From NCBI RefSeq assembly GCF_006345805.1, contig NW_021833066.1, positions 22,675 to 86,674 of the forward strand: a stretch of DNA of 64,000 bases. Reading direction: 5' to 3'. The stretch comes from Octopus sinensis (Eukaryota). The notes under the pieces are model-generated. The model was not told the origin of the DNA. It saw only the letters and a list, made by a program, of their open reading frames with translations, and did not search any database. A program made the position numbers and the translations under genes. This document shows, piece by piece, positions 218 through 62,690 of this stretch; positions within the stretch are counted from its first letter, which is position 1; every line of letters starts with the position of its first letter.

Positions 218-2700
<2,483 letters not shown>

Positions 2701-3779: not shown

Positions 3780-4195
3780 AAGGAGGCGGTGAACTGGCAG
3801 AATCTTTATCACGCCAGACGAAATACTAAGCGGTATTTCGTCTGCCGCTACGTTCTGAGTTCAAATTCCTCCGAGGTCGACTTTGCCTTTTATCCTCTCA
3901 GGGTCGATAAATTATGTACCAGTTACGCACTGGGGTCGATGTAATCGACTTATCCGTTTGTCCTCCTTGTTTGGCCCCTCTGCGTTTAGCCCCTTGTGAG
4001 TAGTAAAGAAATAGGTATTTCGCCTGTCGCTATGTTCTGAGTTCAAATTCCGCCGAGGTCGACTTTGCCTTTCATCCTTTCGGGGTCGATAAATTAGCTA
4101 AGCACTTAGCGGCCATTTCGTCCGTCTTTACATTCTAATTTCAAATTCCACCAAAATCGATTTTGCTTTTCACCCTTTCGGGGTCAATGCATTGG
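3780..4195 (+). mobile_element. SINE family 1 dimer/trimer
   Basis: Same motifs and the same AAGAAATAGGTATTTC junction (~4006-4021); a third partial unit follows. Confidence 0.85.
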
Positions 4196-4399: not shown

Positions 4400-4700
4400 A
4401 GGCAGCGAGTTGGCTGAATCGCTAGCGTGTCGCTCTTAGTTCCAGCTCTTCACATTCTGAGTTCAAATTCCATCGAGGTCGACTAGCTTGGTGCCAAAAT
4501 TTAAAAGATTAAATGTGGTGAACTGGCAGAATCGTTAGAGCGTCGCAAAAATAACTGCTTAGCCGTATTTCTTCTGGTTCTTTACGTCCTGAATTCAAAT
4601 GCCACCTAAGTCGATAATATATGTACCAGTGGAGCACTGGGATGTATGTAATCGGATTCAGCCACATTAGAAATTCCTGACCTTGTGCCAAAATTAGAAA
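4400..4700 (+). mobile_element. Two degenerate SINE family 1 copies (second with alternative tail B)
   Basis: Heads at ~4402 and ~4520; B-box GAGTTCAAATTCC; tail CTTGTGCCAAAATTAGAAA. Confidence 0.65.
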
Positions 4701-4894
4701 GAATTTTTATTATTAATGTTGTTGTTGTTGTCTACCCCTCAGATGAACCGGATCAAACTAAATTATCAAAAGCATTAAAACCCTCACCAGCCCTTGGTTT
4801 TTTCCTTTTTATTCTTCCATAGTGTAGTATCTAAAGTTACACTATTCAATGTACTCATCATGTTTTTTCGCTAGAATGAAGTAGTAGTCCTTAA

Positions 4895-10559: not shown

Positions 10560-10732
10560 ATGCCGTTATGTTCTGAGTTCAAATTCCGCCGCGGTCGACT
10601 TTGCCTTTCATTCTTTCGGTGTTGATTAAATAATTAGTTACGCACTGGCGTCGGTGTAATTGCCTTAATTCCATTGTCTGTCCTTGTTTGCCCCCGTCTA
10701 TATTTAACCCCTTGTGGGCAATAAAGAAATAA
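10560..10732 (+). mobile_element. SINE family 1, 5'-truncated, tail A
   Basis: B-box, core and tail CCCTTGTGGGCAATAAAGAAAT. Confidence 0.82.
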
Positions 10733-11358: not shown

Positions 11359-12419
11359 ATATATATATATGTATATATTTATTTATATTATATTGAGGGT
11401 ACTACTATTCGTAGATACCAACACGCTAAGAGGGACCAATGCGGTCAAAACTACTAAAAATAAACAAAATTTTACCGAATGCAAAACTTCAAAACACATC
11501 ATTTTAAAAAAGAATTCAGTTACATATCACATGTGATTTCGCATTTAATGCAGAATATGCATTTCATGTTCATCAGTGCAACAAACTCAAGAAATATAAG
11601 AAAAAACATAACGTTACAAGCTCGATAGCCAACCGTAGAATTCGTCGTAGCATGTACGAATGTTTATCTTTACATATCTATGAAAATGGCGGGCTTATTC
11701 GCAATGCATTTCGGTAAAAATTGTCTAGTCGGTGAAAAATATAAATTAACAATTGAGGATAAAATCTTTAAAAGAAATTATCAGTAGTCAGCGTGAAAAA
11801 CCTCGTAAGAGAAAAAATCCGTAAATTCTTCCTCTTTGAAAATATTCATTTATATTATATATACATATATATATGTTTGTAGATATATGCATATACATAC
11901 ATACTTATTTATATTTACACATATAATTATCCACACAATAAGGAAACAAAAACTCCATCTCGTGACGCTTAAAATCTAACCAACCAAGTAATATCAATAA
12001 AATGGTCCAATTGAAAGAATTTAGGATAACATAGAAATTGCAGTATAGGGGAGGATTTCTTCCAAGCATTTCACTTATCTGAATTTATTAGAGTTATCTT
12101 TTACTTGGTTTCATATGGCAGAACACCCTAGGGGGAGTATCTGTCTATTGATTTCATGTATAGGATAATCGAAGTTTCTCGGCACACTCTATTGCAAATG
12201 TGCCAACTTTCTTCAAAAGTATTAAGTATGCAGAGGTAGTTTTTCTCTCAGCCATTAGGTGCATATGCTTACATTCTACAAGTAATGCTGGTGCAGTAGA
12301 TGAAGTTAATAACACCGCTTCTTGGTTCGTACAAGGTAGACCCGGCAACATCGATCCTGAAAAGTGACAGGTTTATCATTAAACAACAGCAGCAATTCAA
12401 ACGTTCACAATTACTTTCC

Positions 12420-12650
12420 GGCTAGCTGGCAGAACCGTTAGCACGCCGGGCGAAATGCGTAGCCGTATTTCGTCTGCCGTTACGTTCTGAGTTCAAATTC
12501 CGCCGAGGTCAACTTTACCTTTCATCCTTTCGGGGTCGATGAATTAAGTACCAGTTACGCACTGGGGCCGATATAATCGACTTAATCCTTTTGTCTGACC
12601 TTGTATGTACCGTCTGTGTTTAGCTCCTTGTGGGTAGTAAAGAAATAGGT
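12420..12650 (+). mobile_element. SINE family 1, full monomer, tail A
   Basis: Complete head, core and tail ending GTAAAGAAATAGGTA. Confidence 0.88.
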
Positions 12651-13077
12651 ACACAATAACTTTCCGATCGAATCCAGAACGGTGCCTCTATGCTCTTGCT
12701 CACCCTTTGAGAAATAGCAGTTAAGTCACACTTAACTTTCAACCTACATTCGTTAGTTTTATACGACAAAATTTCCAGTTTTTCCACGATGCCAAGATCA
12801 CGCAATTTGCAACACCCCAAAAGACATAATACGGCATCTAGAATTGAGGCTAGTAAACTGTTATACTTTGTTAATTTGTTAATTCTCCTCTTTGGGGCAG
12901 AAACTTAGACAAATATACACAGCAAAGGAGAAAAGAGAAGCGTTTACAATGTGGATCTTTCACAAATTAGGAAGAACGAGCTGGAAAGAGAGGCTGCCAA
13001 ATGCTGCCTTTCTAGAAAAAGCAGAAAGTCCAACGACACCTATTGTCGAGAATCAAATTCATAACGCTTTCATATCT

Positions 13078-13280
13078 TGAGGCGGAGAGAATCGTTTTCG
13101 ACCCACGAAAGTCCTTAGCGGAATGTCTTCCGACTTTGCGTTCTTAGTTCAAATATCACCGGTGTTATTTTTGTCTTTTATTCTGTCGGAGATCGATAAA
13201 ATAAATATCAGTGGAACACTGGGGACGATGTATTCGACTTATCCCTTCTCCCAGAATTGCTAGTCTCCTACTAAAATTTG
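13078..13280 (+). mobile_element. Degenerate SINE family 1, tail B
   Basis: Decayed head and core; tail GAATTGCTAGTCTCCTACTAAAATTTGAAATC. Confidence 0.6.
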
Positions 13281-13489
13281 AAATCAATGCTGTCATATCT
13301 TGAGCCACAAGTCATTGCCCAAGACCGATTCTGACTGGAAGCGGTGGCAGAGAAGAGAACCAGAAGCCGTAGAAGACGTCTGTGGAGAACATACAATAAA
13401 AAAAGAGGCAGAGTTGTAGAGTATTGGCAAGATGAATACGGATTACAGGAAGGGCACCTGGCAGGTGATGTGTGACAAGGTAATCAGAT

Positions 13490-13682
13490 GTTAAAGGCGG
13501 GGCGAAATGCTTAGCGGCATTTCGTCCGTCTTTACGTTCTGATTTTAAATTCCGCCGAGGTTGACTTTGCATTTTATCCCTTCGAAATCAATAGAATAAG
13601 TACCAGCGGAGCATTGGTGAATATAATCGATTTAGCCACATCCTCGAAAATTGCCGGCATTGTGCCATAATTTGAAACCAAT
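13490..13682 (+). mobile_element. SINE family 1, tail B
   Basis: GGGCGAAATGCTTAGCGGCATTTCG, core, tail AATTGCCGGCATTGTGCCATAATTTGAAACCAAT. Confidence 0.75.
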
Positions 13683-14184
13683 ATTTTCAGAAATTGTCCT
13701 TCCATTTCTTTTTTTCTCACTTGAGATGGCACGGTTTCAATTCAGAGAATTTTGGCTGCTGTTTCTAGCAGATTATCCGAATGAGTAATAGTCCCGTAAC
13801 GGTGTCAGAAATTAAGGGTTGCGGTGGTTAACAAGGTTTTGGTTATGTTGGTTACTTCCTGGTTGTCATGGTCCTTGTGGTGTTGTTGCTGGTTTAGGTG
13901 GTTGTTTTGTTGTTTTTTTTAGTTGTGTCGGGCAAGAGTGGGGTATGGAACCGGGTGCGATAATTGCGCCAATGGAGGTGGGGCGAGGCGGGGTTGAAAA
14001 CGAAGTGGATGACCAACTATGACATTTTGAATTGATCGGTGGAATAACAAGATTTCCACCATCGCCAAAGGCACGTCTGTTTGTTGTGTATTTGACAGGA
14101 CACAATATGGCGCACAATAGCACTAATTACTGACTCAAATAATAATATAAGTATGGATGCATGTATATGTGTGTGTGTGTATCC

Positions 14185-29452: not shown

Positions 29453-29487
<35 letters not shown>

Positions 29488-29488
29488 G

Positions 29489-29531
<43 letters not shown>

Positions 29532-29555
29532 GCAAGCAGGCATGCAGACAGACAA

Positions 29556-29636
<81 letters not shown>

Positions 29637-29637
29637 G

Positions 29638-29695
<58 letters not shown>

Positions 29696-29696
29696 T

Positions 29697-29789
<93 letters not shown>

Positions 29790-29834
29790 CGACAGACCGA
29801 CAGACAGACGGATTGATAGATAGATAGATAGATA
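29410..29834. repeat. (GATA)n/(TATC)n microsatellite
   Basis: Direct reading; 3' flank of the truncated Tx1 copy. Confidence 0.95.
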
Positions 29835-30982
29835 TGTTTCTTTATTAGCCACACAGGGCTGCACACAGACGGGACAAATTACAAGGTAGAGCTTTACTTT
29901 CAGGGATAAAAAGGTGAGATTGATTTTCGATCAAGAGGGATCGTAAAATCAAAGAAAGAAGGAAGCAAAAGCAACAAAAAAGGAGGTGGGGAATAAAAAT
30001 AAAAGGAAAAAGAAAAAATCGATCAATAGAGATCGTTATCACAGAAATATCAATATAAAATGTAAAGGGGAAGACAGGTGAAGTTTACCCGTGGAAAGAA
30101 AAGCCTACGGAAAAGACCACCTCGGTCAATGCAGTTACATTTTACAAATAAGTAACTCTCCGTATTAAATTTTTACCGTTCATAGGATCATAGTCAAGGT
30201 GGCTTCGTCATTCATACGTGCCATCCTTGCTACATTCACCCATCTTTTTTTAAAACATTCACTAGACAAAACTTGCCTCTCTACTCTCACTTTCCTTTTC
30301 AAGTGATACTTGAAGAAGTTGATGAGATTGACCAGAGAGGAAAGTGTTTGTCTCTTATCCTTTCAGACGCGTCCACCAGATACATTCTTTCGCCATAGCC
30401 ACAAGTATGATAAAAATAGCTCTTCCTTCCCGTTTGAAGGAAGGAGGCGTGACAATATTGACGATAGACTCAGCTGATAAACCGACTCGTCCCACACGTG
30501 ACAGCAGTTGTTCGACATAAGCCCACAGGTTGGAAATTGTTGTACACTGCACGATTGCGTGCAGAACGGTTTCGTCGATCTGACCGCATCTCGGCCAGGT
30601 CGGCCCCGTGTTTCTCGAGCCGTGTCTGTAGAGCTTATCCCGAACGGGTAGCGCTTCTCGGTAGCACTGCCAGGCCAGGGATCTCTGGAAGTTGTCCATA
30701 CGTCCCAGCACGAAATTCGTCTAAACAGGCGGGTCAGGTATTTCTCGTCGACGCCCAGGTTTGCCCCAAGATCGTCGTCGTACCTCCTCTCCACTAATCC
30801 CTTATAGAATGCTTGGGTTGTGTTGAAGTCACTCAAGGTCGACCCGAGACGGCATAGTTGCTTGAGAGCAACGCGACACTCGCGGTGCCATTCGCCCTTC
30901 CTCGGCCTCTTTTTGATCCACGACTGCAGTTCTGTCATGGAGACGAGCTGCGGGAATGCGTGCCTTACAAACGTTCACCGTC
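29835..30982 (-). mobile_element. 5'-truncated Tx1-like copy (diverged subfamily) in (TATC)n
   Basis: ORFs 30363-30938 and 30355-30711 parallel the ORF2 C-terminus of the full copy (FQRSLAWQCYREALPVR, ETVLHAIVQC, MAKECIWWTRLKG). 3'UTR ends GGCTAATAAAGAAAC; (TATC)n on both sides. Confidence 0.9.
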
Positions 30983-31006
30983 AGATAGATAGATAGAAAG
31001 ATAGAT

Positions 31007-31290
<284 letters not shown>

Positions 31291-33350: not shown

Positions 33351-33456
33351 TATATATATATGAATGTTTGTGTGTGTGTGTCTTCTCTGTGTCTCTATTA
33401 GCAGATTTTATGTTAAATTATATATATATATATATATATATATAGATATATATATA

Positions 33457-33625
33457 TTTCTTTACTACCCACAAGGGGTTAAACATAGAGGGGACAAACA
33501 AGGACAGACAAAGGGATTAAGTAGATTACATCGACCCCAGTGCGAAACTGGTACTTTATTTATCGACCCCGAAAGGATGACAGGCAAAGTCGACCTCGGC
33601 GGAAATTGAACTCAGAACGTAACTT
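33457..33625 (-). mobile_element. SINE family 1, 3' part, tail A
   Basis: Reverse complement of core and tail (TTTCTTTACTACCCACAAGGGG...). Confidence 0.85.
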
Positions 33626-36470: not shown

Positions 36471-36550
36471 ATTCGTACACACACATACACACACAAAGGC
36501 ACATGCACCCCTTCCTACACACACAAACAAACAAATACATACATAAATAC

Positions 36551-36589
<39 letters not shown>

Positions 36590-36647
36590 TAGACAGATAG
36601 ATATATATATAGATATATATATAGATTAGATAGATAGATAGAGAGAG

Positions 36648-36788
<141 letters not shown>

Positions 36789-36789
36789 T

Positions 36790-36825
<36 letters not shown>

Positions 36826-37118
36826 CTTTTTATTGTAGCCACACAGGGCTAAACACAGAATAAAAATGGACGAAAAACAATGTAGAATTTTTTCTTTTCG
36901 AGGTGGGATGGGTGGGGCAAAAAAAAAAAAAAACCTTTGATCAATAGGGATCTGTGGGTTGTGTGGTGTATAAAAAGCAATATATATATATATATATTAG
37001 GTTCGCAGTTTAGGTGTAGCCTTGGAAAGAAAAACCTACAAAAAAGACCAAGGTCACCTCAGGAAATTCGAAAAAGAACACATGAGTAAGTCGCCTTACT
37101 TCTCGTTGTCTCTTTTGG

Positions 37119-40100
37119 TTACAGATTTATGCTTAAAATAGTGTCGTCTTTCATACTGACCATTTTTGCCACTTTTACCCACTTTTTATTAAAACATTTG
37201 TTCGACAAAGCCTTCCTCTCTATTCTCATCCTCCTTTTCAAGTGGTACTTGAAAAAGTTGACGAGAGACTGACCAGAGAGGAAGGTGTTTGTTTGCAGTC
37301 CTTTCAAACGAGTCCACCACACACATTCTTTCGCCATAGCCATCAGCGTAACGAAAACCGTTTTCCCTTCCCGTTTAAAGGAAGGTGGTGGAACAATACC
37401 CAAGATAGACTCGGCCGATAGGCGAGCCTGACCTACACGAGACAACAGCTGTTCGACGAAGGACCACAGCTCTGAAATATCTGGACACTGCACGAGTGCG
37501 TGCAGAACGGTTTCGTCGCTCTGACCGCATCTCGGGCAGGTCGGTCCGGTGATGGTTTTCGAACCGTGTCTGTAGCTCTTCTCTCGAACAGGTAGTGCGT
37601 CTCGATAGCACTGCCAAGCCAAGGATTTCTGGAAGTTATACATAGGCCCCGGCCCGAACGTCGTCCTGAACAGGCGGGTTAGGAATTCTTCGTCGACGCC
37701 CAGGTTTGCCCCGAGTGTGTCGTCGGACCTCCCCTCCACTAGTCCTCTATAGAACGCTTTAGTCGTTTGTAAGTTGCACAAGTTTGACCCCGGTCGGCAG
37801 AGCTGCTGTAGAGCTTGGCGACACTCTCGGTGTCAATCGCCCAGTTTCGGTCTCTTTTTGATCCACGTTTGCAGTTCGGTCAGTGAGACGAGCTGCGGGA
37901 AGTTGCGCCTCACAAACGGCGACCACACCTGTTCACCGTTGTCGATGAATTTCCAGAGATGTCGCAGTCTCAGCGCATGCCTGCGCATCATCAACCACGG
38001 CATGCCCAGTCCTCCATTCAACGGATGTTGACAGCAAATGGACTTCCTCACCATCGGAACGCCACCCTGCCACAGGAAGCGGAAGAGTATGCGTTCCAGT
38101 TTGGTGATGGTGGCGTCGGGACAAGGTACGACGGTCAGGCGGCAATCGATGACGGATGCGATGTACGCGTTCGCCACCTCCGCCCGGCCTTTTAGAGACA
38201 GCTTTCTCTCGGCCCATGTTTGGCTGAGAGCGACCACTCTACTCGTGATCTCGTCCCAATTCGTATCCATTTGGAGGTCCGGACTGAACCAGACCCCGAG
38301 CAATTTAACCGGTCCGTCCGTCCAGCGTCCCACTACTGAGCCGCAGTCGGACGGCATGGGCTTGCTTCTCCAGGTGCCGAGTAGCAAACCCACTGACTTT
38401 TCCGGGTTAATCTTTGCTCCCGTCACCGTTTCATATTTTCTTAGTGTCTCGCCTATCATCTTGATGTGTTTGTCGCTCGACACTATGACGGTGACATCGT
38501 CCGCATATGCCGACACGCTCGTCCCGCAACCCAGTTCCCGTGGGATGCCCCTCAGTGTCACCAGCTTCCGCAGTAGCGGCTCGAGAGTCAATACATACAG
38601 AAGCGCCGACAGGGGACACCCCTGACAGACCGAACGCGTGATGTCAAACGGTTTCGACAGGTGACCGTTCACCCGAATCACCGATCGGATGCCGCTATAC
38701 AAGGCAGCGATCCAACCGCGGAAGACGGGACCGAAGCCAGCCGCCCTGAGGACGGCCGCCAAGTACCGATGGTCGACCCTATCGAAGGCTTTAGACTGAT
38801 CCAATTTATCAGCGCCCCACCCATGCCAGGATCCTTAACTACCCTGTCCACAATGTAGCGCATCAGATGGAGGTTGTCATGTATGGTTCTGCCCGGCACG
38901 GCGCATGTTTGCGCCCTGTCGACCAGTTTACCAATGACAAGCGCCAACCTCTCGGCTATTACTTTGGCCAAAATTTTCAAATCTGCGTTGAGCAGAGTGA
39001 TGGGCCTGAAATTATCTATAAAATTCCCTTTGTTTGAGTCTTTCTTCAGCAACGTCACTGCACCTCGGCTCACGAAACCGGGGATTCTCCCGTTTTGTTG
39101 CCAGTTGCAGTAGACTGATGCCAAGAGGTCGCCAAACAAGTCTGGCATTCGATAATACAGCTCGTAGGGTAAACCATCCAATCCAGGCGACTTATCCCTC
39201 GCGCAGCCCGCCATCGCATCCCACACGTCAGCGGCTGTGATGGGACTTTCACAACACTCCGCTTCTCTTGCCGAGAGCCGCGGCAGGTCGGTCAGGTAGG
39301 CACTGAAATCTATCCCGCGTTCCGACCCACCACTCGCACCAAACAGTCGAGCAAAGTGCTGTTGAAAGGCCTCACACATCCTTTCGGGTTCGAGTAAACT
39401 GCATCCCTGTTGATCTATTAGAGACCGAATGGTTGATCTGTTGCCACGCTGCGCCTCCGCTACCCGGGCCTCTCGCGCTGCTTCAATCCCTTCGTTCCTT
39501 AGAGCACGCATTTTAGCTCTGACGACGCAACCTTCGTGCTTGGCGTTGAGGTGTTGGTCGAGGGCCATCCTCGCAGTCAGCACGTTGGTTGCGTTGCCAG
39601 TGGTAAGTGCCTCTTCTAGTTTCTTAACTAAGTCTCCCCCTACTCTATTTCGTTCTATCGCTAATTCCTTGCTAAACCTAATTGATTCCGATTTTATTGC
39701 CATTTTCAGGGCGTACCACCAGCGGTTGTTAACGACCGCTCCCGTCAGCGCCCTCTTAATTAACTCGCTAATCCGGTTCCTGTAAACCTGTCACGCTAAC
39801 AGCGACGTGTTCAGTTTCCAGTAACCGGGACCCTGCCTATGTGTTTTATCTAAGTCGAGCGTACACGTAACAAATTTGTGATCTGTGTAGCTGACTATTT
39901 TAAATTGTGGACATCCTACACTATCCCTATCCGCTGTCCTGCATAGAATTCTATCTAGATAAGATCTCGACGATCCGACGCGGTTTGTCCAAGTCCACGT
40001 TGGCACGTTCGGATGGTCGAGTCGGAACCTGTCAGACAAATGGAGACGTCTGAGCAGGTCTTTGAGGCTCTTACACCCCCTTCTATTCCTATCCCTTCCC

Positions 40101-40536
40101 ACATAATCTAGATGCGTGTCCAAGGTAGCGTTCCAATCCCCTACTAACAGTAAAGGTCTAGACGTACCCAGGAAAACCTCTAGACGTCTGAAGAAATCCG
40201 CCCGACCCGTTAAGGACGTGCATAAACTGCCATCAGACGGAATGCACACCCATTTCTGCCATCCACGTCCAAGACAACCAGCCTACCCTCCGGGTCTAGG
40301 AATATTGCTCTTACTTTTATCTTTAGACTCTCCCTGTTCGGCAGACAGGGAGAAAAATAAATGTCAAATTGATTGCCAAACATGGACTCGACGGCCCGCG
40401 GCTTACTGAGTCTGGTTTCACTGATAGCTACTATATCCACGTCCAGTGACTTGATGTCGTTTAGAAGGTAACCTTGCTTCCAAGCCGACGCCAAGCCACG
40501 CGCATTCACACAACCTAATTTAAGCATACTTGACAT
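37119..40536 (-). pseudogene. Tx1-like ORF2 (APE endonuclease + reverse transcriptase + zinc finger), split by about 4 frameshifts
   Basis: Consecutive ORF pieces 40536-40210, 40249-39791, 39703-38678, 38804-37833, 37781-37119. APE motifs CVNARGL, ISETRL, LVGDWN, SYLDRIL, YTDHKFV, YWKLN; RT motifs SPGLDGLP, NFRPITLLNAD, KAFDRVD, QGCPLS, YADD; zinc finger CPRC-x7-H-x4-C. Confidence 0.88.
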
Positions 40537-40813
40537 TTACGACAATTGTGTTTTACACACTATATTAGAAGAGACAAGAGGCAAGAAGTGAGGTCACTTA
40601 CTCATTTTAAAAGTTTCATTTTTTTCTTCTTCTTCTTTTGTATTGTTTTTGATGAGGTGTTTGTATAGTTTTTTCGACAGGTATCGTCGATACCCGCCTA
40701 CCGCATTCGGAAATATTGTTTTCAGTATGTGGTGTTGTGCTTGTGTTATGTGTAAAATTCTGATGTGTTTCGGTGGTGTGGTGAGCGGATGATTGTTTGT
40801 CTTAAAGTCATCT

Positions 40814-42456
40814 TCAGATGACCATGTTAGATTTGATGTAGTAGTCCATTAATTCTTTATTGTCTGTGTCTATTGCAGTTAGTTGTGTGTGTGGTTTTAC
40901 GGGTTCATTACTTTTTTGATTGTCTAGGGGGATGTTGTCCTGAGTTAGATATCTCCCTGCTTTACTTCCTTGTTTGGTGGATTTTTTGGATCTTTTTCTT
41001 TTACCCCCTGTGGCTATTTGCCATTCCGTCGAACTTTCGTCGTCCGACGTATCAGTATGGGGTAGAGGCAAAACATTTGCATTACTATGTATGCTTGTAT
41101 AAATTGTTGATGTTTTGTGCGGTGTTTGTTTTGTTGTGGTGTTATGGGTAGCAGTTGTCTTCTCGTCAGTGTTAACTGTCTTTTTAATTGTCGTCCTGGG
41201 TGTGGGTCTATTTTTTGTTAATTCAACAGGTTTAATTTGTTGTGAAGTCAACGGTGATTGTGTTGGTACTGTTTCTTTTCTTGGTGATGTTGTTGCGGTT
41301 TGTTCGTTGGTTTGTTGTTTTTCTTGGCATTGTTCTATAATTGAGTGTGTTGGTGTTGGTGTTGGCAACAAAGGGATTTTATTTGTTTTCTGATTTGTTC
41401 TTTCTTGTTTTTTCTGTACCAGATCGCACTTGGCAATCAAATGTACATTTGTAGCATCTAGGCTTTTTGCCTTCTGCCACAACATATAGGCACTGCCCAT
41501 TCTCCAAGTGGATCTTATCCGGTAGGCTCTCGATAGAGGCCCCCTCAATCTGGATGGTCACCACTATTGTCTTCCCACCCCAAATGTCACCAGGGTACAC
41601 GGCGGTCACCAAATATTAATATTTTTAAATGGTAACAGATTGCCCCTGTTATCCATTTGTTAGGAAGTTCGTTCGAGGTACATTTTTAATTGTGATTCGA
41701 CTCACTCTCTGGTTTTTGTAGTATGGACCATGATGATTTCATCATTTCCCAGAGACTCAGTAGAGTGAGCTTTTGCCACTTCCTGGTTAGGGAAGCGGAC
41801 CACTACTGTGTTAAACTGGGGACCCCAGTTTATATACTCTTTTTCTTTCATTATGTTTTTTAAACATTTTTCCACATCAGTTTTTGTAATCTGTTCATTT
41901 AGTTTTTTGTTTTTTCTAATAATTTTATATACAATTGTCTTATTTTCTATTTCTTGTTTTATATGTTGAGGTGTATGCAGGACTAAATCTTGTCCACGGG
42001 TTGTAAGAGAGCTCTAGTTTCTATGAGCTCTTCATTTGTGAATGTAACAATCTCCTTTTTCTGGCGAAGAATATCTGCGAAATTTACTGTTGTTGATTTT
42101 TTTGTATGAACATCTTCACTATTAGATAGTTCATTTTTATTGTTGTTCTTGTTGTTGCTGTTGTTTTTGTCAATAGTTTTCGTTTCAGTTTTATTTTTAT
42201 CATTTATGTTGGTCGTGGTAGTGGTGGTGGTGGTGGTGGAGGTGGTGGTGGTAGCAGTTGTTGTCTCGTGGTTGCTGTTGTTAGTGGTGGTGGTGGCGGT
42301 GGTGACAGGGCTGTTACCGCACGTGGTTGCAGCGTTCCTTTCACCGATATTCATATTTGCACGTACGTTCTTTTTTTCTCCTATTGTTTCCAAACTAGGA
42401 AAATGCTGGTCAATAAAAGAACGCGACCAGCGTTCTACAATAAAATTTCTAGACAT
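40814..42456 (-). pseudogene. Tx1-like ORF1 (nucleic-acid-binding, zinc knuckle), frameshifted
   Basis: ORF pieces 42456-41983, 41612-41379, 41548-40814. A CCHC knuckle can be rebuilt across a frameshift (KPRCYKC...HLIAKC). Thr/Asn-rich low-complexity segments; lies directly upstream of ORF2. Confidence 0.68.
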
Positions 42457-42658
42457 TTTCTAATGTCTAGAAGAAAATTACAGAAATGAAATGGGGTTGA
42501 AACTGCCCCTAGGGGCGAATTCCTCCCTTGGAAAAGCACTCAAACGAAAGTTGGGTGCCTTACACAACTTATTTGCAAAAATGTTCACAAAAATTGAGCT
42601 ATAAATAGTCAAAATAAATGATTACCTTCGGAGTCGAAGCGACAGCACGTCCATAGAC

Positions 42659-42736
<78 letters not shown>

Positions 42737-43069
42737 TAGATAGATAGATAGATAGATAGATAGATATTTTATATAATATGTATACACAGACACATACACA
42801 CACAGATGAGGAAAGAAATGCATGCACAAACACACACACAATGCAGATAGATAGATACATAGATAGATAGTTAAATAGATAGATAGATTTATATCATTAA
42901 TTACATATATTATGAACATAGACATGTTTGTGTATGTGTGTGTTATGTATAAGCATACATATATACAATTATTAAAGACTTCTAAATATATAAATGTACC
43001 TACGAAAATACTATAGACATATTTACACCCACAAACGTACATAAATCCGCATACTTATATGTGTGGTGA

Positions 43070-45029: not shown

Positions 45030-45723
45030 CAATGATAGTGAAGATGCAGCATGTGGTGGTGATGATGATTGTGATCGTGATCGTCTAGTGGTGGTAGTGG
45101 TGGTGATGATGTCGAAGAGGAAGGGGGAAGGAAAATGTTGGTGGTGGACTTTGGGATGCTGGATGCTGCGTCTCAGATTTTCTTGTTATTGAGGAGAGGA
45201 TGAGCTGTTTAAAATTGAGAACGATGATTATGAAGATGACGACGACGACGACGACGATGATGATGATGGTGGTGATGTTGGTGGTGGTGATGATGATGGT
45301 GGTGATGATGATGATGATGATGGCAATGGTGGTTTTTGATGGTGCGTAGTTATGAATTAGGGTGTCGGGGCACTAATAGTGGTGGTGGTGGATGAGTCAT
45401 TTCGCTTATTGTTATCATAGTTGTTCATGTTTTGGGAATTTGGTGGCGGCGATGGAGAGGTGAGCTGAGTTTTTGTTGTTGATGTATTTGCTAACGTTCA
45501 ATATTTATTGATCCCAACAATGATGGCTATGATGATTATGGGGATTTTGATGATGGTTACGATGGTGATGGTGATGATGCTGGTAGTATTCTTGTCCTTC
45601 TTCTCCTTGCTCTCCTTCTTCTTCTCCCCCTTCTTCTCCTCCTCCTCCTTCTTCTTCAGGCCCTGGTGTAACAATCAATGTTCATTTTCTGCCAGGGTCC
45701 TCTTGAATGAGTACCAGTAATAT

Positions 45724-45822
45724 CAGTTTCAAATTCTGGAACGAGGCCAGCAATTTCGGAGCAAGGAGTAAGTTGATTAGATTTTACCCGGTGCAGTAAC
45801 GATTCTGCCAGCTCGCTACTTT
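45724..45822 (-). mobile_element. Internally deleted mini-SINE (head + tail B) with a 16 bp direct-repeat flank
   Basis: TGAGTACCAGTAATAT at 45708-45723 and 45823-45838 flanks GCGAGCTGGCAGAATCGTT...AATTGCTGGCCTCGTTCCAGAATTTGAAAC. Confidence 0.7.
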
Positions 45823-50740: not shown

Positions 50741-51254
50741 TGTCCCACGTATACTCGTGATTTTAACTCGTGGACTAGAAACTTATGCATTGAGTGCTGG
50801 ATGTGAAATAATAAAACTCATCTTCAATATTCGCGTCTGAATCTAATTCATTATATGTCGGTGTATTGCTTCTTCTTTCGAACTTTATACATATATTACT
50901 AATGTTATGCAGTGGAATGTATTTTGCAGTGGAATGTATTCCTTTTGCAGTGGAATGTATTTTAATTTTTAATCTTGAGAATAAACGTCCATATTTCAAT
51001 CTAATTTATACATACACACACACACACACTCACATTCACACTCATAAGCATATATGCATGGATATAGATATATATGTATAGGTGTATAGGTACATTTGTA
51101 TGTATACATATATTTATATACATATATATACGTACATATATGAGTACACATATATATAGTTTTATATATATATATGTACATACATATGTCTGTTTATGAA
51201 TGCATGCGTGTGTCTACCAATACATACATACATATGTATATAGGTAAATGGACA

Positions 51255-51440
<186 letters not shown>

Positions 51441-51448
51441 TGCATATA

Positions 51449-57589: not shown

Positions 57590-58600
57590 TGTAGGCGGCT
57601 TTTGTGAAACATATCTTTATGCATCTCGTCTCCTTGACCGAACTGCTATCATCGGTCGAGCAAGGACTGACATTAGATGTTTAGCATTATAGCAGCTGGA
57701 AATGCCGTTGGCTGGAAAAAAACTTTAGATTACTATAGAGTGTGGGTGAGGGTACTACCGTCCACGATGGACAACTAGTGGATTTACGCATCGCCAAGAA
57801 CTCATGGCAATGACCAGTATGTTGAATATGTGCTATTATTTCGGATAAGCTCTGCAAGCGTGGAAGCACCAAAAGCCAAACGGTTCAGTGATGCGTGCAG
57901 GGCAACAAAAGGCGTTCTGCACGCCATCCTTCAATGTCTTTTTATTAACGACTTGTGGACCCGTGTTGAATAGTTGCTGCTGCGTATACGAGAACAAACC
58001 TGGTTGTCCACCGAGCGCATAGTGAAGATCAATGTGCCAACTTCCTTTGCCAGGGAAGAGACGTAGATCATTCTTTACTCGGTGGTTGTGGCGGAAGAAG
58101 TTATGTGGTGGGCTCTTCTGAAAGGTTTGAAGATTTGAAGACAACCATTTTCCAATCTACACAAGCTCTCAACAACTTTTTCAAGTGGCACATGAAGAAG
58201 GAGATGAAGATAGAGAGGTAGGTGTTGTCTTCTAGGATGTTTATCGAAAGATGGAGAGAATGGCAACACTGATGTATCTACATGGGCCTGCCTTGAGTAT
58301 GCTCTTTTTCTCAATAGAGGACAGCGCGCACACTCATAGCCTGGCAGATAGCAGATTCATCCAAGTGTTCTTTGTGGGGTTTACCCCCAAAACTTCCCAA
58401 GTTGGACTCGCCCACGTTAGAAGTTTTCTTATTAAAACTTGGGGTGGGGTTAGGTATTTCATTTCAATATCTTTTGCTGTAGCATTATTATTGTGATTCC
58501 CTTTTGATCAATGTAAACCCTTTATTTGTACGTTGTATTTCATCTTTCTATACTCTCCTGAATGTATTGAGTCCTTGTGGCCAATACACGAAATTATGAT
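57590..58600 (+). mobile_element. Old, degenerate Tx1-like 3' fragment
   Basis: Plus-strand translation gives FVKHIFMHLVSLTEL, VLHAILQC, LSTERIVKINVPTSFARE, EEVMWW, LNNFFKWHMKKEMKIER, matching the ORF2 C-terminus with stops and frameshifts. Tail CCTTGTGGCCAATA then (ATT)/(GTT)n. Confidence 0.75.
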
Positions 58601-58885
58601 TATTATTATTGTTGTTGTTGTTGTTGTTGTTGTTACTATAACATCGTTGTTTTAGGTGATCGTTGCCGTCTTAATTTTTAATCAGGTGTGTTGTCTTGCA
58701 ATTAAATCCCACGAGTGTCTACAACTTCTCCAGTAAACAGTGTTGAAATGTCGACAAAAACCTCGAGAGTGACGTACCCCACCGTAGTAGTGACTATCGT
58801 GGTTGCAACGGTTATGATTGATGGAGAGTTAGAGGTGCAGTACTTGGAAAATACATGAGTGTGTATGTACGTGAGGGTGTGTATG

Positions 58886-62299: not shown

Positions 62300-62690
<391 letters not shown>

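What the first reader, a model, noticed from the sequence alone, without database searches (positions are those of the whole stretch)
12595..12650. SINE family 1 tail A matches the 3' end of the Tx1-like LINE
Seen: SINE tail TCTGACCTTGTATGTACCGTCTGTGTTTAGCTCCTTGTGGGTAGTAAAGAAAT aligns over ~50 bp with the 3' terminus of the Tx1 copy at 29835-29890 (minus: TCTACCTTGTAATTTGTCCCGTCTGTGTGCAGCCCTGTGTGGCTAATAAAGAAAC). The full copy ends CTGTGTTTAGCCCTGTGTGGCTACAATAAAAAGT and the old copy ends CCTTGTGGCCAATA. Known: 'stringent' SINEs carry their partner LINE's 3' tail, whereas mammalian L1 partners rely on poly(A). Inference: a major octopod SINE lineage is mobilised by a Tx1/L1-clade element through a shared 3' cis-signal. 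Caveat: the tail-A SINEs here are not themselves in (TATC)n.
Basis: partly seen in the sequence, partly recalled or inferred. Interest (0 to 1): 0.8.

Follow-up and report, generated by a model that had tools for sequence, protein, structure and literature searches.

The report
Octopus SINE shares LINE 3' tail
The last ~50 bases of an abundant octopus short repeat (SINE) are a copy of the 3' end of an L1/Tx1-type LINE lying in the same window, so the SINE most likely borrows that LINE's copying enzyme; this is a familiar kind of partnership seen here with an unusual partner.

Summary
The SINE tail consensus aligns to the 3' terminus of the 5'-truncated LINE copy at 29836-29887 (-) with 40 of 47 bases identical (z = 17, 0 of 2000 shuffles). 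The two best non-SINE matches in the whole 64 kb are the 3' termini of the two copies of one LINE family.

The tail belongs to the LINE and is not an inserted SINE fragment. The last ~30 nt are the most conserved part of the 3'UTR in relatives from Argonauta and from unidentified contigs. Cuttlefish relatives keep the core GGC-CTTGT-GCC.

In Argonauta hians an independent SINE/LINE tail match exists (81% over 58 nt). There the SINE tail carries that species' LINE version, and both elements end GAAAT|CTAT.

A 4-bp hairpin with a CUUGU loop is plausible but weakly supported, resting on one compensatory event.

The LINE has APE, RT and zf-RVT domains. Its best solved relative is human L1 ORF2p. 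It sits in (CTAT)n arrays. Tx1 membership fits these facts but was not tested by phylogeny.

SINE copies have 13-15 bp TSDs, no poly(A), and are not in microsatellites.

Verdict: a stringent-type SINE/LINE pair with an L1-group partner. It is a new member of a known kind and of moderate interest.

The parts
12421..12651 (+). SINE copy (family 1, tail A), 231 nt, flanked by a 15-bp TSD CACAAT(T/A)ACTTTCCG at 12406-12420 and 12652-12666. It ends GAAAT plus 5 extra nt (AGGTA) and has no poly(A).
12598..12646 (+). LINE-homologous 3' tail of the SINE. It contains the candidate hairpin GCTC-CTTGT-GGGT followed by AGTAAAGAAAT.
29836..30981 (-). 5'-truncated copy (~1.15 kb) of the L1/Tx1-like LINE, inserted inside a (CTAT)n array. 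Its last 52 nt (29836-29887) are the best match to the SINE tail.
36825..42650 (-). Near full-length LINE (~5.8 kb) with APE, RT and zf-RVT. ORF2 is broken by frameshifts and a stop. (CTAT)n lies on both sides in the same orientation. Its 3' end carries the same TCTGTGTTTAGCCCTGTGTGGCTA motif.
57800..58585 (+). Old, decayed copy of a related LINE. It ends ...GAGTCCTTGTGGCCAATACACGAAAT and is followed by (ATT)n/(GTT)n.
1408..1821 (+). Dimeric tail-A SINE (monomers 1411-1636 and 1635-1817) inserted as one unit, with a single TSD AATAGAGAGTTAA.
3794..4016 (+). Tail-A SINE copy followed by a truncated second monomer joined at the same junction (GAAATA|GGTATTTC).
10561..10731 (+). 5'-truncated tail-A SINE copy with TSD (A)AATATCTTAATG.
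33455..33623 (-). 5'-truncated tail-A SINE copy lying inside (TA)n.

Best explanation
Tail A of this octopod SINE comes from the 3' terminal ~50 nt of an L1-group (Tx1-like) LINE family that encodes an APE endonuclease, an RT and a C-terminal zinc-binding domain. The likely mechanism is as follows. The LINE's ORF2 protein recognises the conserved 3' terminal module on its own RNA. That module is TCTGTGT, a small hairpin GGCC-CUUGU-GGCY, then A(A/G)UAAAGAAAU. Reverse transcription starts at the GAAAU end and not on a poly(A) tail (stringent-type recognition). The pol III SINE transcript carries the same module and is copied in trans by target-primed reverse transcription, which leaves 13-15 bp target-site duplications. 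Shown here: the homology and its statistics, that the tail is part of the LINE, conservation across genera, absence of poly(A), the TSDs, and the shared junction in Argonauta. Inferred: protein-RNA recognition, the role of the hairpin, trans-mobilisation, and Tx1 clade membership.
For: (1) The tail match has z = 17.4 and 10.2, and the two LINE termini are the top non-SINE hits in the window. (2) The match ends at the 3' terminus of both elements, and neither carries poly(A). (3) The last ~30 nt form a conserved island in 3'UTRs that are otherwise largely unalignable. This holds for LINE relatives at 61-72% amino-acid identity: Argonauta L001, and contigs L003 and L004. GTGGC is invariant. Cuttlefish and other relatives at 35-41% identity keep TCGGCCTTGTGCCA. 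(4) In Argonauta hians the SINE tail matches the LINE 3' end at 81% over 58 nt, E = 5e-8. The SINE carries the Argonauta LINE version GGCCCTTGTGGCTAA. All 4 independent SINE ends and LINE Arg2 are followed by CTAT. (5) The hairpin is recovered by MFE folding of most intact tails. 86.8% of cells pair, against 13-48% when the partner columns are slid. Pair 2 is G-C in the LINEs and C-G in the octopus SINE. (6) The SINE TSDs of 13-15 bp fit APE-type TPRT. (7) The LINE belongs to the L1 group: Pfam finds Exo_endo_phos, RVT_1 and zf-RVT, and the best PDB match is L1 ORF2p at E ~1e-18, against ~1e-9 to 1e-12 for R2-type RTs. (8) AATAAA is conserved in the LINE tails but degraded in the SINE tails (AGTAAA, AACAGA, AATAGA). 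The hairpin and the GAAAT terminus are kept in both. This is what is expected if those are the shared cis-signal.
Against: The two octopus LINE copies sit in (CTAT)n arrays, but none of the six tail-A SINE copies does, so the SINE's actual driver may be a non-microsatellite sister subfamily not present in the window. The hairpin has only 4 bp, and its covariation reduces to about one lineage-specific compensatory event (8/500 shuffles reach the observed pairing). My structural alignment was made by hand with the structure in mind. No 3' ends of RTE, CR1, Dong-R4 or L2 from the same genome were available for comparison. The LINE copies here are dead, with ORF2 broken into pieces, so concurrent activity is not shown. 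Tx1 versus L1 proper was not resolved.
Confidence: 0.72

Rival explanations
1. The SINE is mobilised by a different LINE clade (for example RTE-BovB, CR1 or Dong-R4, all abundant in octopus) whose 3' end matches tail A as well or better. On this view the resemblance to the L1/Tx1-like LINE is secondary, such as a tail exchanged between LINE clades.
For: Published octopus annotations list RTE, Dong-R4 and CR1 as more abundant or more active than L1-Tx1. No 3' ends of those clades could be examined here. The tail-A SINEs do not share the (CTAT)n location of the octopus LINE copies.
Against: In 64 kb of octopus and 22 kb of Argonauta sequence, the only non-SINE matches to the tail are the 3' ends of this LINE family. 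The SINE tail co-varies with this family's tail between genera, and in Argonauta it shares the GAAAT|CTAT junction.
Confidence: 0.13
2. The LINE termini are SINE fragments that inserted independently next to each LINE copy.
For: SINEs are very dense in this window.
Against: Only the last ~50 nt are shared, never the SINE body. The motif sits at the same position, directly abutting the target, in at least 7 LINE copies from at least 3 sources including cuttlefish relatives. No TSD flanks the fragment. The LINE versions carry their own diagnostic differences (AATAAA, and a CTGTGT loop in the two window copies).
Confidence: 0.02
3. The shared motif is conserved for 3'-end formation of transcripts (a polyadenylation or termination signal) and not for RT recognition, so it says nothing about who mobilises the SINE.
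For: The LINE tails contain a canonical AATAAA 11 nt from the end.
Against: The SINE is a short internal-promoter-type element with no need for a pol II poly(A) signal, and AATAAA is the part that decays in the SINE tails. Neither element carries poly(A). The shared portion extends ~35 nt upstream of AATAAA.
Confidence: 0.08
4. The similarity is a chance match or a low-complexity artefact.
For: The window is extremely rich in simple repeats.
Against: 0 of 2000 shuffles reach the score, with z = 17. The background maximum over 128 kb of tiles is 25 against 50. The match was replicated in Argonauta.
Confidence: 0.01

Closest known systems
Stringent-type SINE/LINE pairs with a common 3' tail (e.g. 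eel UnaSINE1/UnaL2, tortoise Pol III SINE/CR1, tobacco TS/RTE; Ohshima 1996, Kajikawa & Okada 2002, as reviewed in PMC3747384)
   Same: The SINE's last ~50 nt are homologous to the partner LINE's 3' terminus. There is no poly(A). A small terminal stem-loop precedes a short conserved terminal sequence. TSDs are present.
   Different: The partner here is an L1-group (Tx1-like) LINE, not L2, CR1 or RTE. No terminal short repeat such as (TGTAA)n is evident. Function has not been tested.
L1-clade stringent pairs: maize ZmSINE2/3 with LINE1-1_ZM, and Chlamydomonas SINEX-3_CR with L1-1_CR (PMC3472496)
   Same: An L1-group LINE has a conserved structured 3' end that is shared with a SINE. [quoted passage not shown]
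   Different: Those are plant and algal elements that end in poly(A). This is an animal (cephalopod) case without poly(A).
SINEU mobilised by Tx1-Mar in crocodilians (Kojima 2015, PMC4494074)
   Same: A SINE family is attributed to Tx1-type machinery, and the Tx1 elements are target-specific.
   Different: The SINEU/Tx1-Mar link rests on shared target preference and shared 5' heads. Here the link rests on a shared 3' tail, and the octopus SINE copies do not share the LINE's microsatellite location.
Microsatellite-specific Tx1 elements Kibi (TC)n and Koshi (TTC)n, and crocodilian (TTCC)n/(TTTC)n families (as cited in PMC4494074)
   Same: An APE-type L1-group LINE is inserted in one orientation inside a specific microsatellite: (CTAT)n for two copies, and (ATT)n for a relative.
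   Different: The repeat units differ. Argonauta relatives are not in microsatellites. A terminal CUAU microhomology could contribute to the targeting.
Octopus tRNA-derived SINEs OK/OR1/OR2 (Ohshima & Okada 1994) and the 'tRNA-Core' SINEs of octopus annotations (PMC8967140)
   Same: Same host group, similar length, a B-box-like GAGTTCAAATTCC, and a body that from memory resembles the CORE domain.
   Different: I had no reference sequences, so identity with OR1/OR2 is untested. No partner LINE for these SINEs is stated in the papers I could search.

Membership tests
Stringent-type SINE/LINE pair (shared 3' tail) | The SINE 3' end is homologous to the 3' end of a LINE in the same genome, above chance | tested here: met
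   40/47 identities, z = 17.4, 0/2000 shuffles. The LINE termini are the top non-SINE hits in the window. Replicated in Argonauta at 81% over 58 nt.
Stringent-type SINE/LINE pair (shared 3' tail) | The homology reaches the very 3' terminus of both elements, and there is no poly(A) tail | tested here: met
   Both end ...TAAAGAAA(T/C) directly at the flank, with 0-5 extra nt in SINE copies.
Stringent-type SINE/LINE pair (shared 3' tail) | The tail is an intrinsic, conserved part of the LINE family | tested here: met
   The last ~30 nt form a conserved island in the 3'UTR alignment of 6 copies. The core is kept in cuttlefish relatives.
Stringent-type SINE/LINE pair (shared 3' tail) | A conserved stem-loop in the tail, supported by compensatory changes | tested here: inconclusive
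   The stem has 4 bp. 86.8% of cells pair, against 79% in shuffles (8/500) and 13-48% in slid controls. One pair shows G-C against C-G, which is essentially a single event.
Stringent-type SINE/LINE pair (shared 3' tail) | The SINE and the LINE share an insertion signature (target or junction) | tested here: inconclusive
   Argonauta: 4 independent SINE ends and 1 of 2 LINE ends read GAAAT|CTAT. Octopus window: the LINEs are in (CTAT)n and the SINEs are at varied AT-rich sites.
Stringent-type SINE/LINE pair (shared 3' tail) | The LINE's RT mobilises the SINE in trans, dependent on the tail | not testable with these tools
   Requires a retrotransposition assay.
Tx1 clade (L1 group) non-LTR retrotransposons | APE endonuclease + RT + C-terminal zinc-binding domain in ORF2 | tested here: met
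   Pfam finds Exo_endo_phos, RVT_1 and zf-RVT. The best PDB relative is human L1 ORF2p at E ~1e-18 for both RT halves.
Tx1 clade (L1 group) non-LTR retrotransposons | The RT groups with Tx1 references and not with L1 proper in a phylogeny | not tested
   No Tx1 reference sequence could be obtained with these tools. Indirect support: octopus TE annotations report L1-Tx1 as the only L1-like class.
Tx1 clade (L1 group) non-LTR retrotransposons | Sequence-specific insertion into a repetitive target, in one orientation | tested here: met
   2 of 2 younger window copies lie inside (CTAT)n in the same orientation, and 2 of about 5 original arrays in the window are occupied. L003 and the old copy abut (ATT)n. 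Argonauta copies are not in microsatellites.
tRNA-derived CORE-SINE | A tRNA-derived head with A and B boxes | tested here: inconclusive
   ARAGORN and Rfam (E <= 1) find nothing. A B-box-like GAGTTCAAATTCC is visible.
tRNA-derived CORE-SINE | A central CORE domain | not tested
   No reference was available. The resemblance to the MIR core is from memory only. Published annotations call the main octopus SINEs tRNA-Core.
Relaxed, poly(A)-dependent L1 partner SINE (Alu/B1 type) | The SINE ends in poly(A) and shares no tail with the LINE | tested here: not met
   None of the 6 octopus and 5 Argonauta SINE ends has poly(A), and a shared tail is present.

The most novel reading that the evidence does not exclude
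One ancient L1-group (Tx1-like) LINE family of coleoid cephalopods may use a conserved 3' hairpin with a CUUGU loop for stringent template recognition. It may have supplied the tails, and therefore the amplification machinery, for the CORE-type SINEs that make up roughly a tenth of octopus genomes. This could include a second tail ('tail B', GGC-CTTGT-GCC-AAATTTGAAA) captured from a sister lineage of the same family. A terminal CUAU microhomology could also explain why some family members home to (CTAT)n microsatellites while their SINE passengers scatter.
Probability: 0.35. Interest if true: 0.62.

Novelty: new member of a known kind. Interest (0 to 1): 0.45.

Why it matters
SINEs are the largest repeat class in octopus genomes (about 11-12% in O. 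vulgaris, PMC13282606). Their expansion is octopus-specific, yet the papers I could search name no partner LINE. Naming the driver would let SINE and LINE activity be dated together and tested in an assay. It would also add an animal case to the very short list of L1-group LINEs that recognise a specific 3' sequence and not poly(A). That list bears on whether stringent recognition is ancestral in the L1 group (PMC3472496).

Tried and rejected
(1) The search for related loci with the ORF2 C-terminal alignment in metagenome contigs found no relative.
(2) An exact-pattern scan for the tail motif in metagenome contigs gave 9 hits. All were chance matches in bacterial-looking coding sequence. That collection therefore holds no useful cephalopod DNA.
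(3) Contigs L002, L005 and L006 stop before the LINE 3' end, and P0005 was not on record.
(4) I suspected the short LINE copy was an internal-deletion derivative keeping a piece of the 5'UTR. Alignment shows its first bases continue the ORF2 homology at about position 4737 of the full copy, so it is a plain 5' truncation.
(5) The other long ORFs in the window have no Pfam domains, so no other LINE clade was available in the window for comparison.
(6) ARAGORN and Rfam gave nothing for the SINE head.
(7) The outer helix (UCUGUG with UAAAGA) appears in some MFE folds but not consistently, so I do not claim it.
(8) Literature searches found no statement of an octopus SINE/Tx1 tail relationship. 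Repbase and Dfam entries could not be consulted.

Full report
**Observation**

- The SINE copy occupies 12421-12651 (+). Its tail TCTGACCTTGTATGTACCGTCTGTGTTTAGCTCCTTGTGGGTAGTAAAGAAAT ends at 12646.
- On the minus strand, a LINE copy ends ...TCTACCTTGTAATTTGTCCCGTCTGTGTGCAGCCCTGTGTGGCTAATAAAGAAAC at 29836 and runs straight into (TATC)n.
- The long copy ends ...CTGTGTTTAGCCCTGTGTGGCTACAATAAAAAGT at 36825, again at (TATC)n.
- A decayed third copy ends ...CCTTGTGGCCAATACACGAAAT at about 58585 (+), next to (ATT)n/(GTT)n.

**Statistics**

- In-window blastn with the SINE copy finds the other SINE copies plus one non-SINE hit. That hit is 12598-12645 against 29887-29837 (-), 78% over 51 nt, E = 6.7e-6.
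- I made a consensus from six tail-A copies (alignment A1).
- Its last 52 nt align to the truncated LINE's terminus with 40/47 identities and one 3-nt gap. The score is 50 against a shuffle mean of 12.1 and sd of 2.2 (z = 17.4, 0/2000).
- Against the full copy z = 10.2.
- I scanned the tail against every 80-nt tile of both strands. The best non-SINE scores are the two LINE 3' termini (50 and 33), and the next background score is 25.
The old copy's match alone is not significant (z = 1.6).

**What the LINE is**

- The 5.8-kb element at 36825-42650 (-) encodes Exo_endo_phos, RVT_1 and zf-RVT domains. ORF2 is broken by frameshifts and one in-frame stop.
- Both RT halves hit human L1 ORF2p best among solved structures (E ~1e-18). 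R2-type RTs score far lower. The endonuclease piece hits only L1 ORF2p, and weakly.
- It therefore belongs to the L1 group.
- Both younger copies lie inside (CTAT)n arrays in the same orientation.
- The window holds seven (TAGA)n blocks, which correspond to about five original arrays. Two of these are occupied and three are empty. The arrays therefore pre-exist the insertions, and insertion is target-specific, which is typical of the Tx1 group (Kojima & Fujiwara 2004, as cited in PMC4494074).
- Published octopus annotations list L1-Tx1 as the only L1-like class.
- I could not obtain a Tx1 reference, so clade membership is probable but untested.
- The short copy (29836-30981) is a plain 5' truncation starting at about position 4737 of the full element.

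**The tail belongs to the LINE**

- A protein search with ORF2 gave relatives at 61-72% identity. Their contigs were then fetched.
- Argonauta hians (L001/L019) has a LINE ending ...TTCTGTGTCAGCCAGGTGGCTAAGAAAGAAAT. A 3'UTR-only copy just downstream ends ...TTCTGTGTCGGCCCTTGTGGCTAATAAAGAAAT.
- A JGI contig (L003) ends ...GGGCCCTTGTGGCCAATAAAAGAAATC followed by (ATT)n.
- An ENA contig (L004) ends ...CCTCTTGTGGCCAATCAACACAC.
- In the 3'UTR alignment of six copies, only the first ~100 nt and the last ~30 nt are conserved, and GTGGC is invariant.
- More distant relatives at 35-41% identity are the cuttlefish Acanthosepion pharaonis (L016) and two ENA contigs (L017, L018). All keep TCGGCCTTGTGCCA near the 3' end.
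- Only the terminal ~50 nt is ever shared with the SINE, never the SINE body.
- The idea that the LINE termini are inserted SINE fragments is therefore rejected.

**Independent replication**

- The Argonauta locus contains its own SINE, related in body to the octopus SINE at about 70%.
- Its tail ...TCTGTCCTTCTGTGTTTGGCCCTTGTGGCTAACAGAGAAAT matches the Argonauta LINE 3' end at 81% over 58 nt, E = 5e-8.
- That tail carries the Argonauta LINE form GGCC...GGCT, not the octopus SINE form GCCC...GGGT. SINE and LINE tails therefore co-vary by genus.
- Five Argonauta SINE ends, four of them independent, and one of the two LINE ends are followed immediately by CTAT.
- In one SINE the 14-bp TSD includes CTAT. 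In another the TSD starts at TAT.
- This fits an RNA that ends ...GAAAUCUAU and anneals by microhomology to the nicked target.
- It would also make (CTAT)n a preferred landing site. This last step is inference.

**Candidate cis-signal**

- Just upstream of A(A/G)TAAAGAAAT every intact tail can form a 4-bp hairpin:
  - AGCC-CTGTGT-GGCT in the window LINEs;
  - GGCC-CTTGT-GGCT/C in Argonauta and L003;
  - GCCC-CTTGT-GGGT in the octopus SINE;
  - GGC-CTTGT-GCC in the decapodiform relatives.
- MFE folding recovers the hairpin in most intact tails.
- On a MAFFT alignment of 17 tails, 86.8% of cells pair. Shuffles give 79% (8/500 reach the observed value), and slid controls give 13-48%.
- Pair 2 is G-C in 8 sequences and C-G in 5.
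- That compensatory change is essentially a single event in the octopus SINE lineage, so the structure is plausible but not established.
- AATAAA is conserved in the LINE tails but decays in the SINE tails. The hairpin and the GAAAT terminus persist in both.

**SINE insertion features**

- Tail-A copies have TSDs of 13-15 bp and no poly(A). Between GAAAT and the TSD there are 0-5 extra nt.
- Their targets are varied AT-rich sites, not (CTAT)n.
- This is the main point against the two window LINE copies being the actual drivers.
- Argonauta LINE relatives are not in microsatellites either. A non-microsatellite sister subfamily is therefore the likely partner.

**Comparison with what is known**

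- SINE/LINE tail sharing and stringent recognition are classical (PMC3747384).
- Within the L1 group it is rare. [quoted passage not shown]
- Crocodilian SINEU was linked to Tx1-Mar through shared targets, not through tails (PMC4494074).
- I found no paper that names a partner LINE for octopus SINEs. Repbase and Dfam could not be checked.

**Verdict**

- It is a new member of a known kind, of moderate interest.
- Still open: direct proof of mobilisation, Tx1 phylogeny, and screening against the other LINE clades of the genome.

Noticed in passing
window 1408-1821 and 3794-4100; also 12647-12651: Tail-A SINEs occur as head-to-tail dimers joined at the same point (GAAATA|GGTATTTC, position ~56 of the next monomer). 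The 1411-1817 dimer has a single TSD, so it inserted as one unit. The monomeric copy at 12421-12651 ends GAAAT+AGGTA, which is the first bases of that junction. This could mean RT initiated at the internal tail of a dimer transcript.
   Followed up: partly
window 13106-13295, 13497-13695, 4608-4700, 45719-45783 (-): A second SINE family shares the body but has a different tail ('tail B': ...GAAATTGCCGGC(C/A)TTGTGCCA(A/T)AATTTGAAAC). Its GGC-CTTGT-GCC-A-AATTT core resembles the 3' motif TCGGCCTTGTGCCA(C/A)ATTT of the decapodiform LINE relatives L016-L018. The match is short (z about 3.5-4.3).
   Followed up: partly
window 57800-58620; L003 1980-2105: Related LINE copies (the old window copy and JGI contig L003) abut (ATT)n and not (CTAT)n. 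L004 runs into CA-rich sequence. Different subfamilies of one LINE family seem associated with different microsatellites.
   Followed up: partly
L019 11994-12657 (= L001 7994-8657), Argonauta hians: A 3'UTR-only (heavily 5'-truncated) LINE copy lies about 130 bp downstream of the 3' end of a longer LINE copy.
   Followed up: no
L019 1477-1500 (-) and 2803-3045 (-): One Argonauta SINE has its last ~13 nt duplicated in tandem (CTAGTAGAGAATT-CTAATAGAGAAAT-CTAT). Another has 13 extra nt, including a G10 run, at its 5' junction.
   Followed up: no
window, whole: The window is extremely dense in microsatellites. All seven (TAGA)n blocks lie in the same strand orientation (216-489, 29453-29834, 30983-31146, 36535-36824, 42653-42766, 51254-51441, 62302-62686), alongside many long (AT)n and (TTA)n arrays.
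   Followed up: no
protein P0005: A protein labelled 'MAG: zinc-binding domain-containing protein [Herbaspirillum sp.]' is 61% identical to this cephalopod LINE ORF2. This probably reflects eukaryotic contamination in a bacterial metagenome-assembled genome.
   Followed up: no
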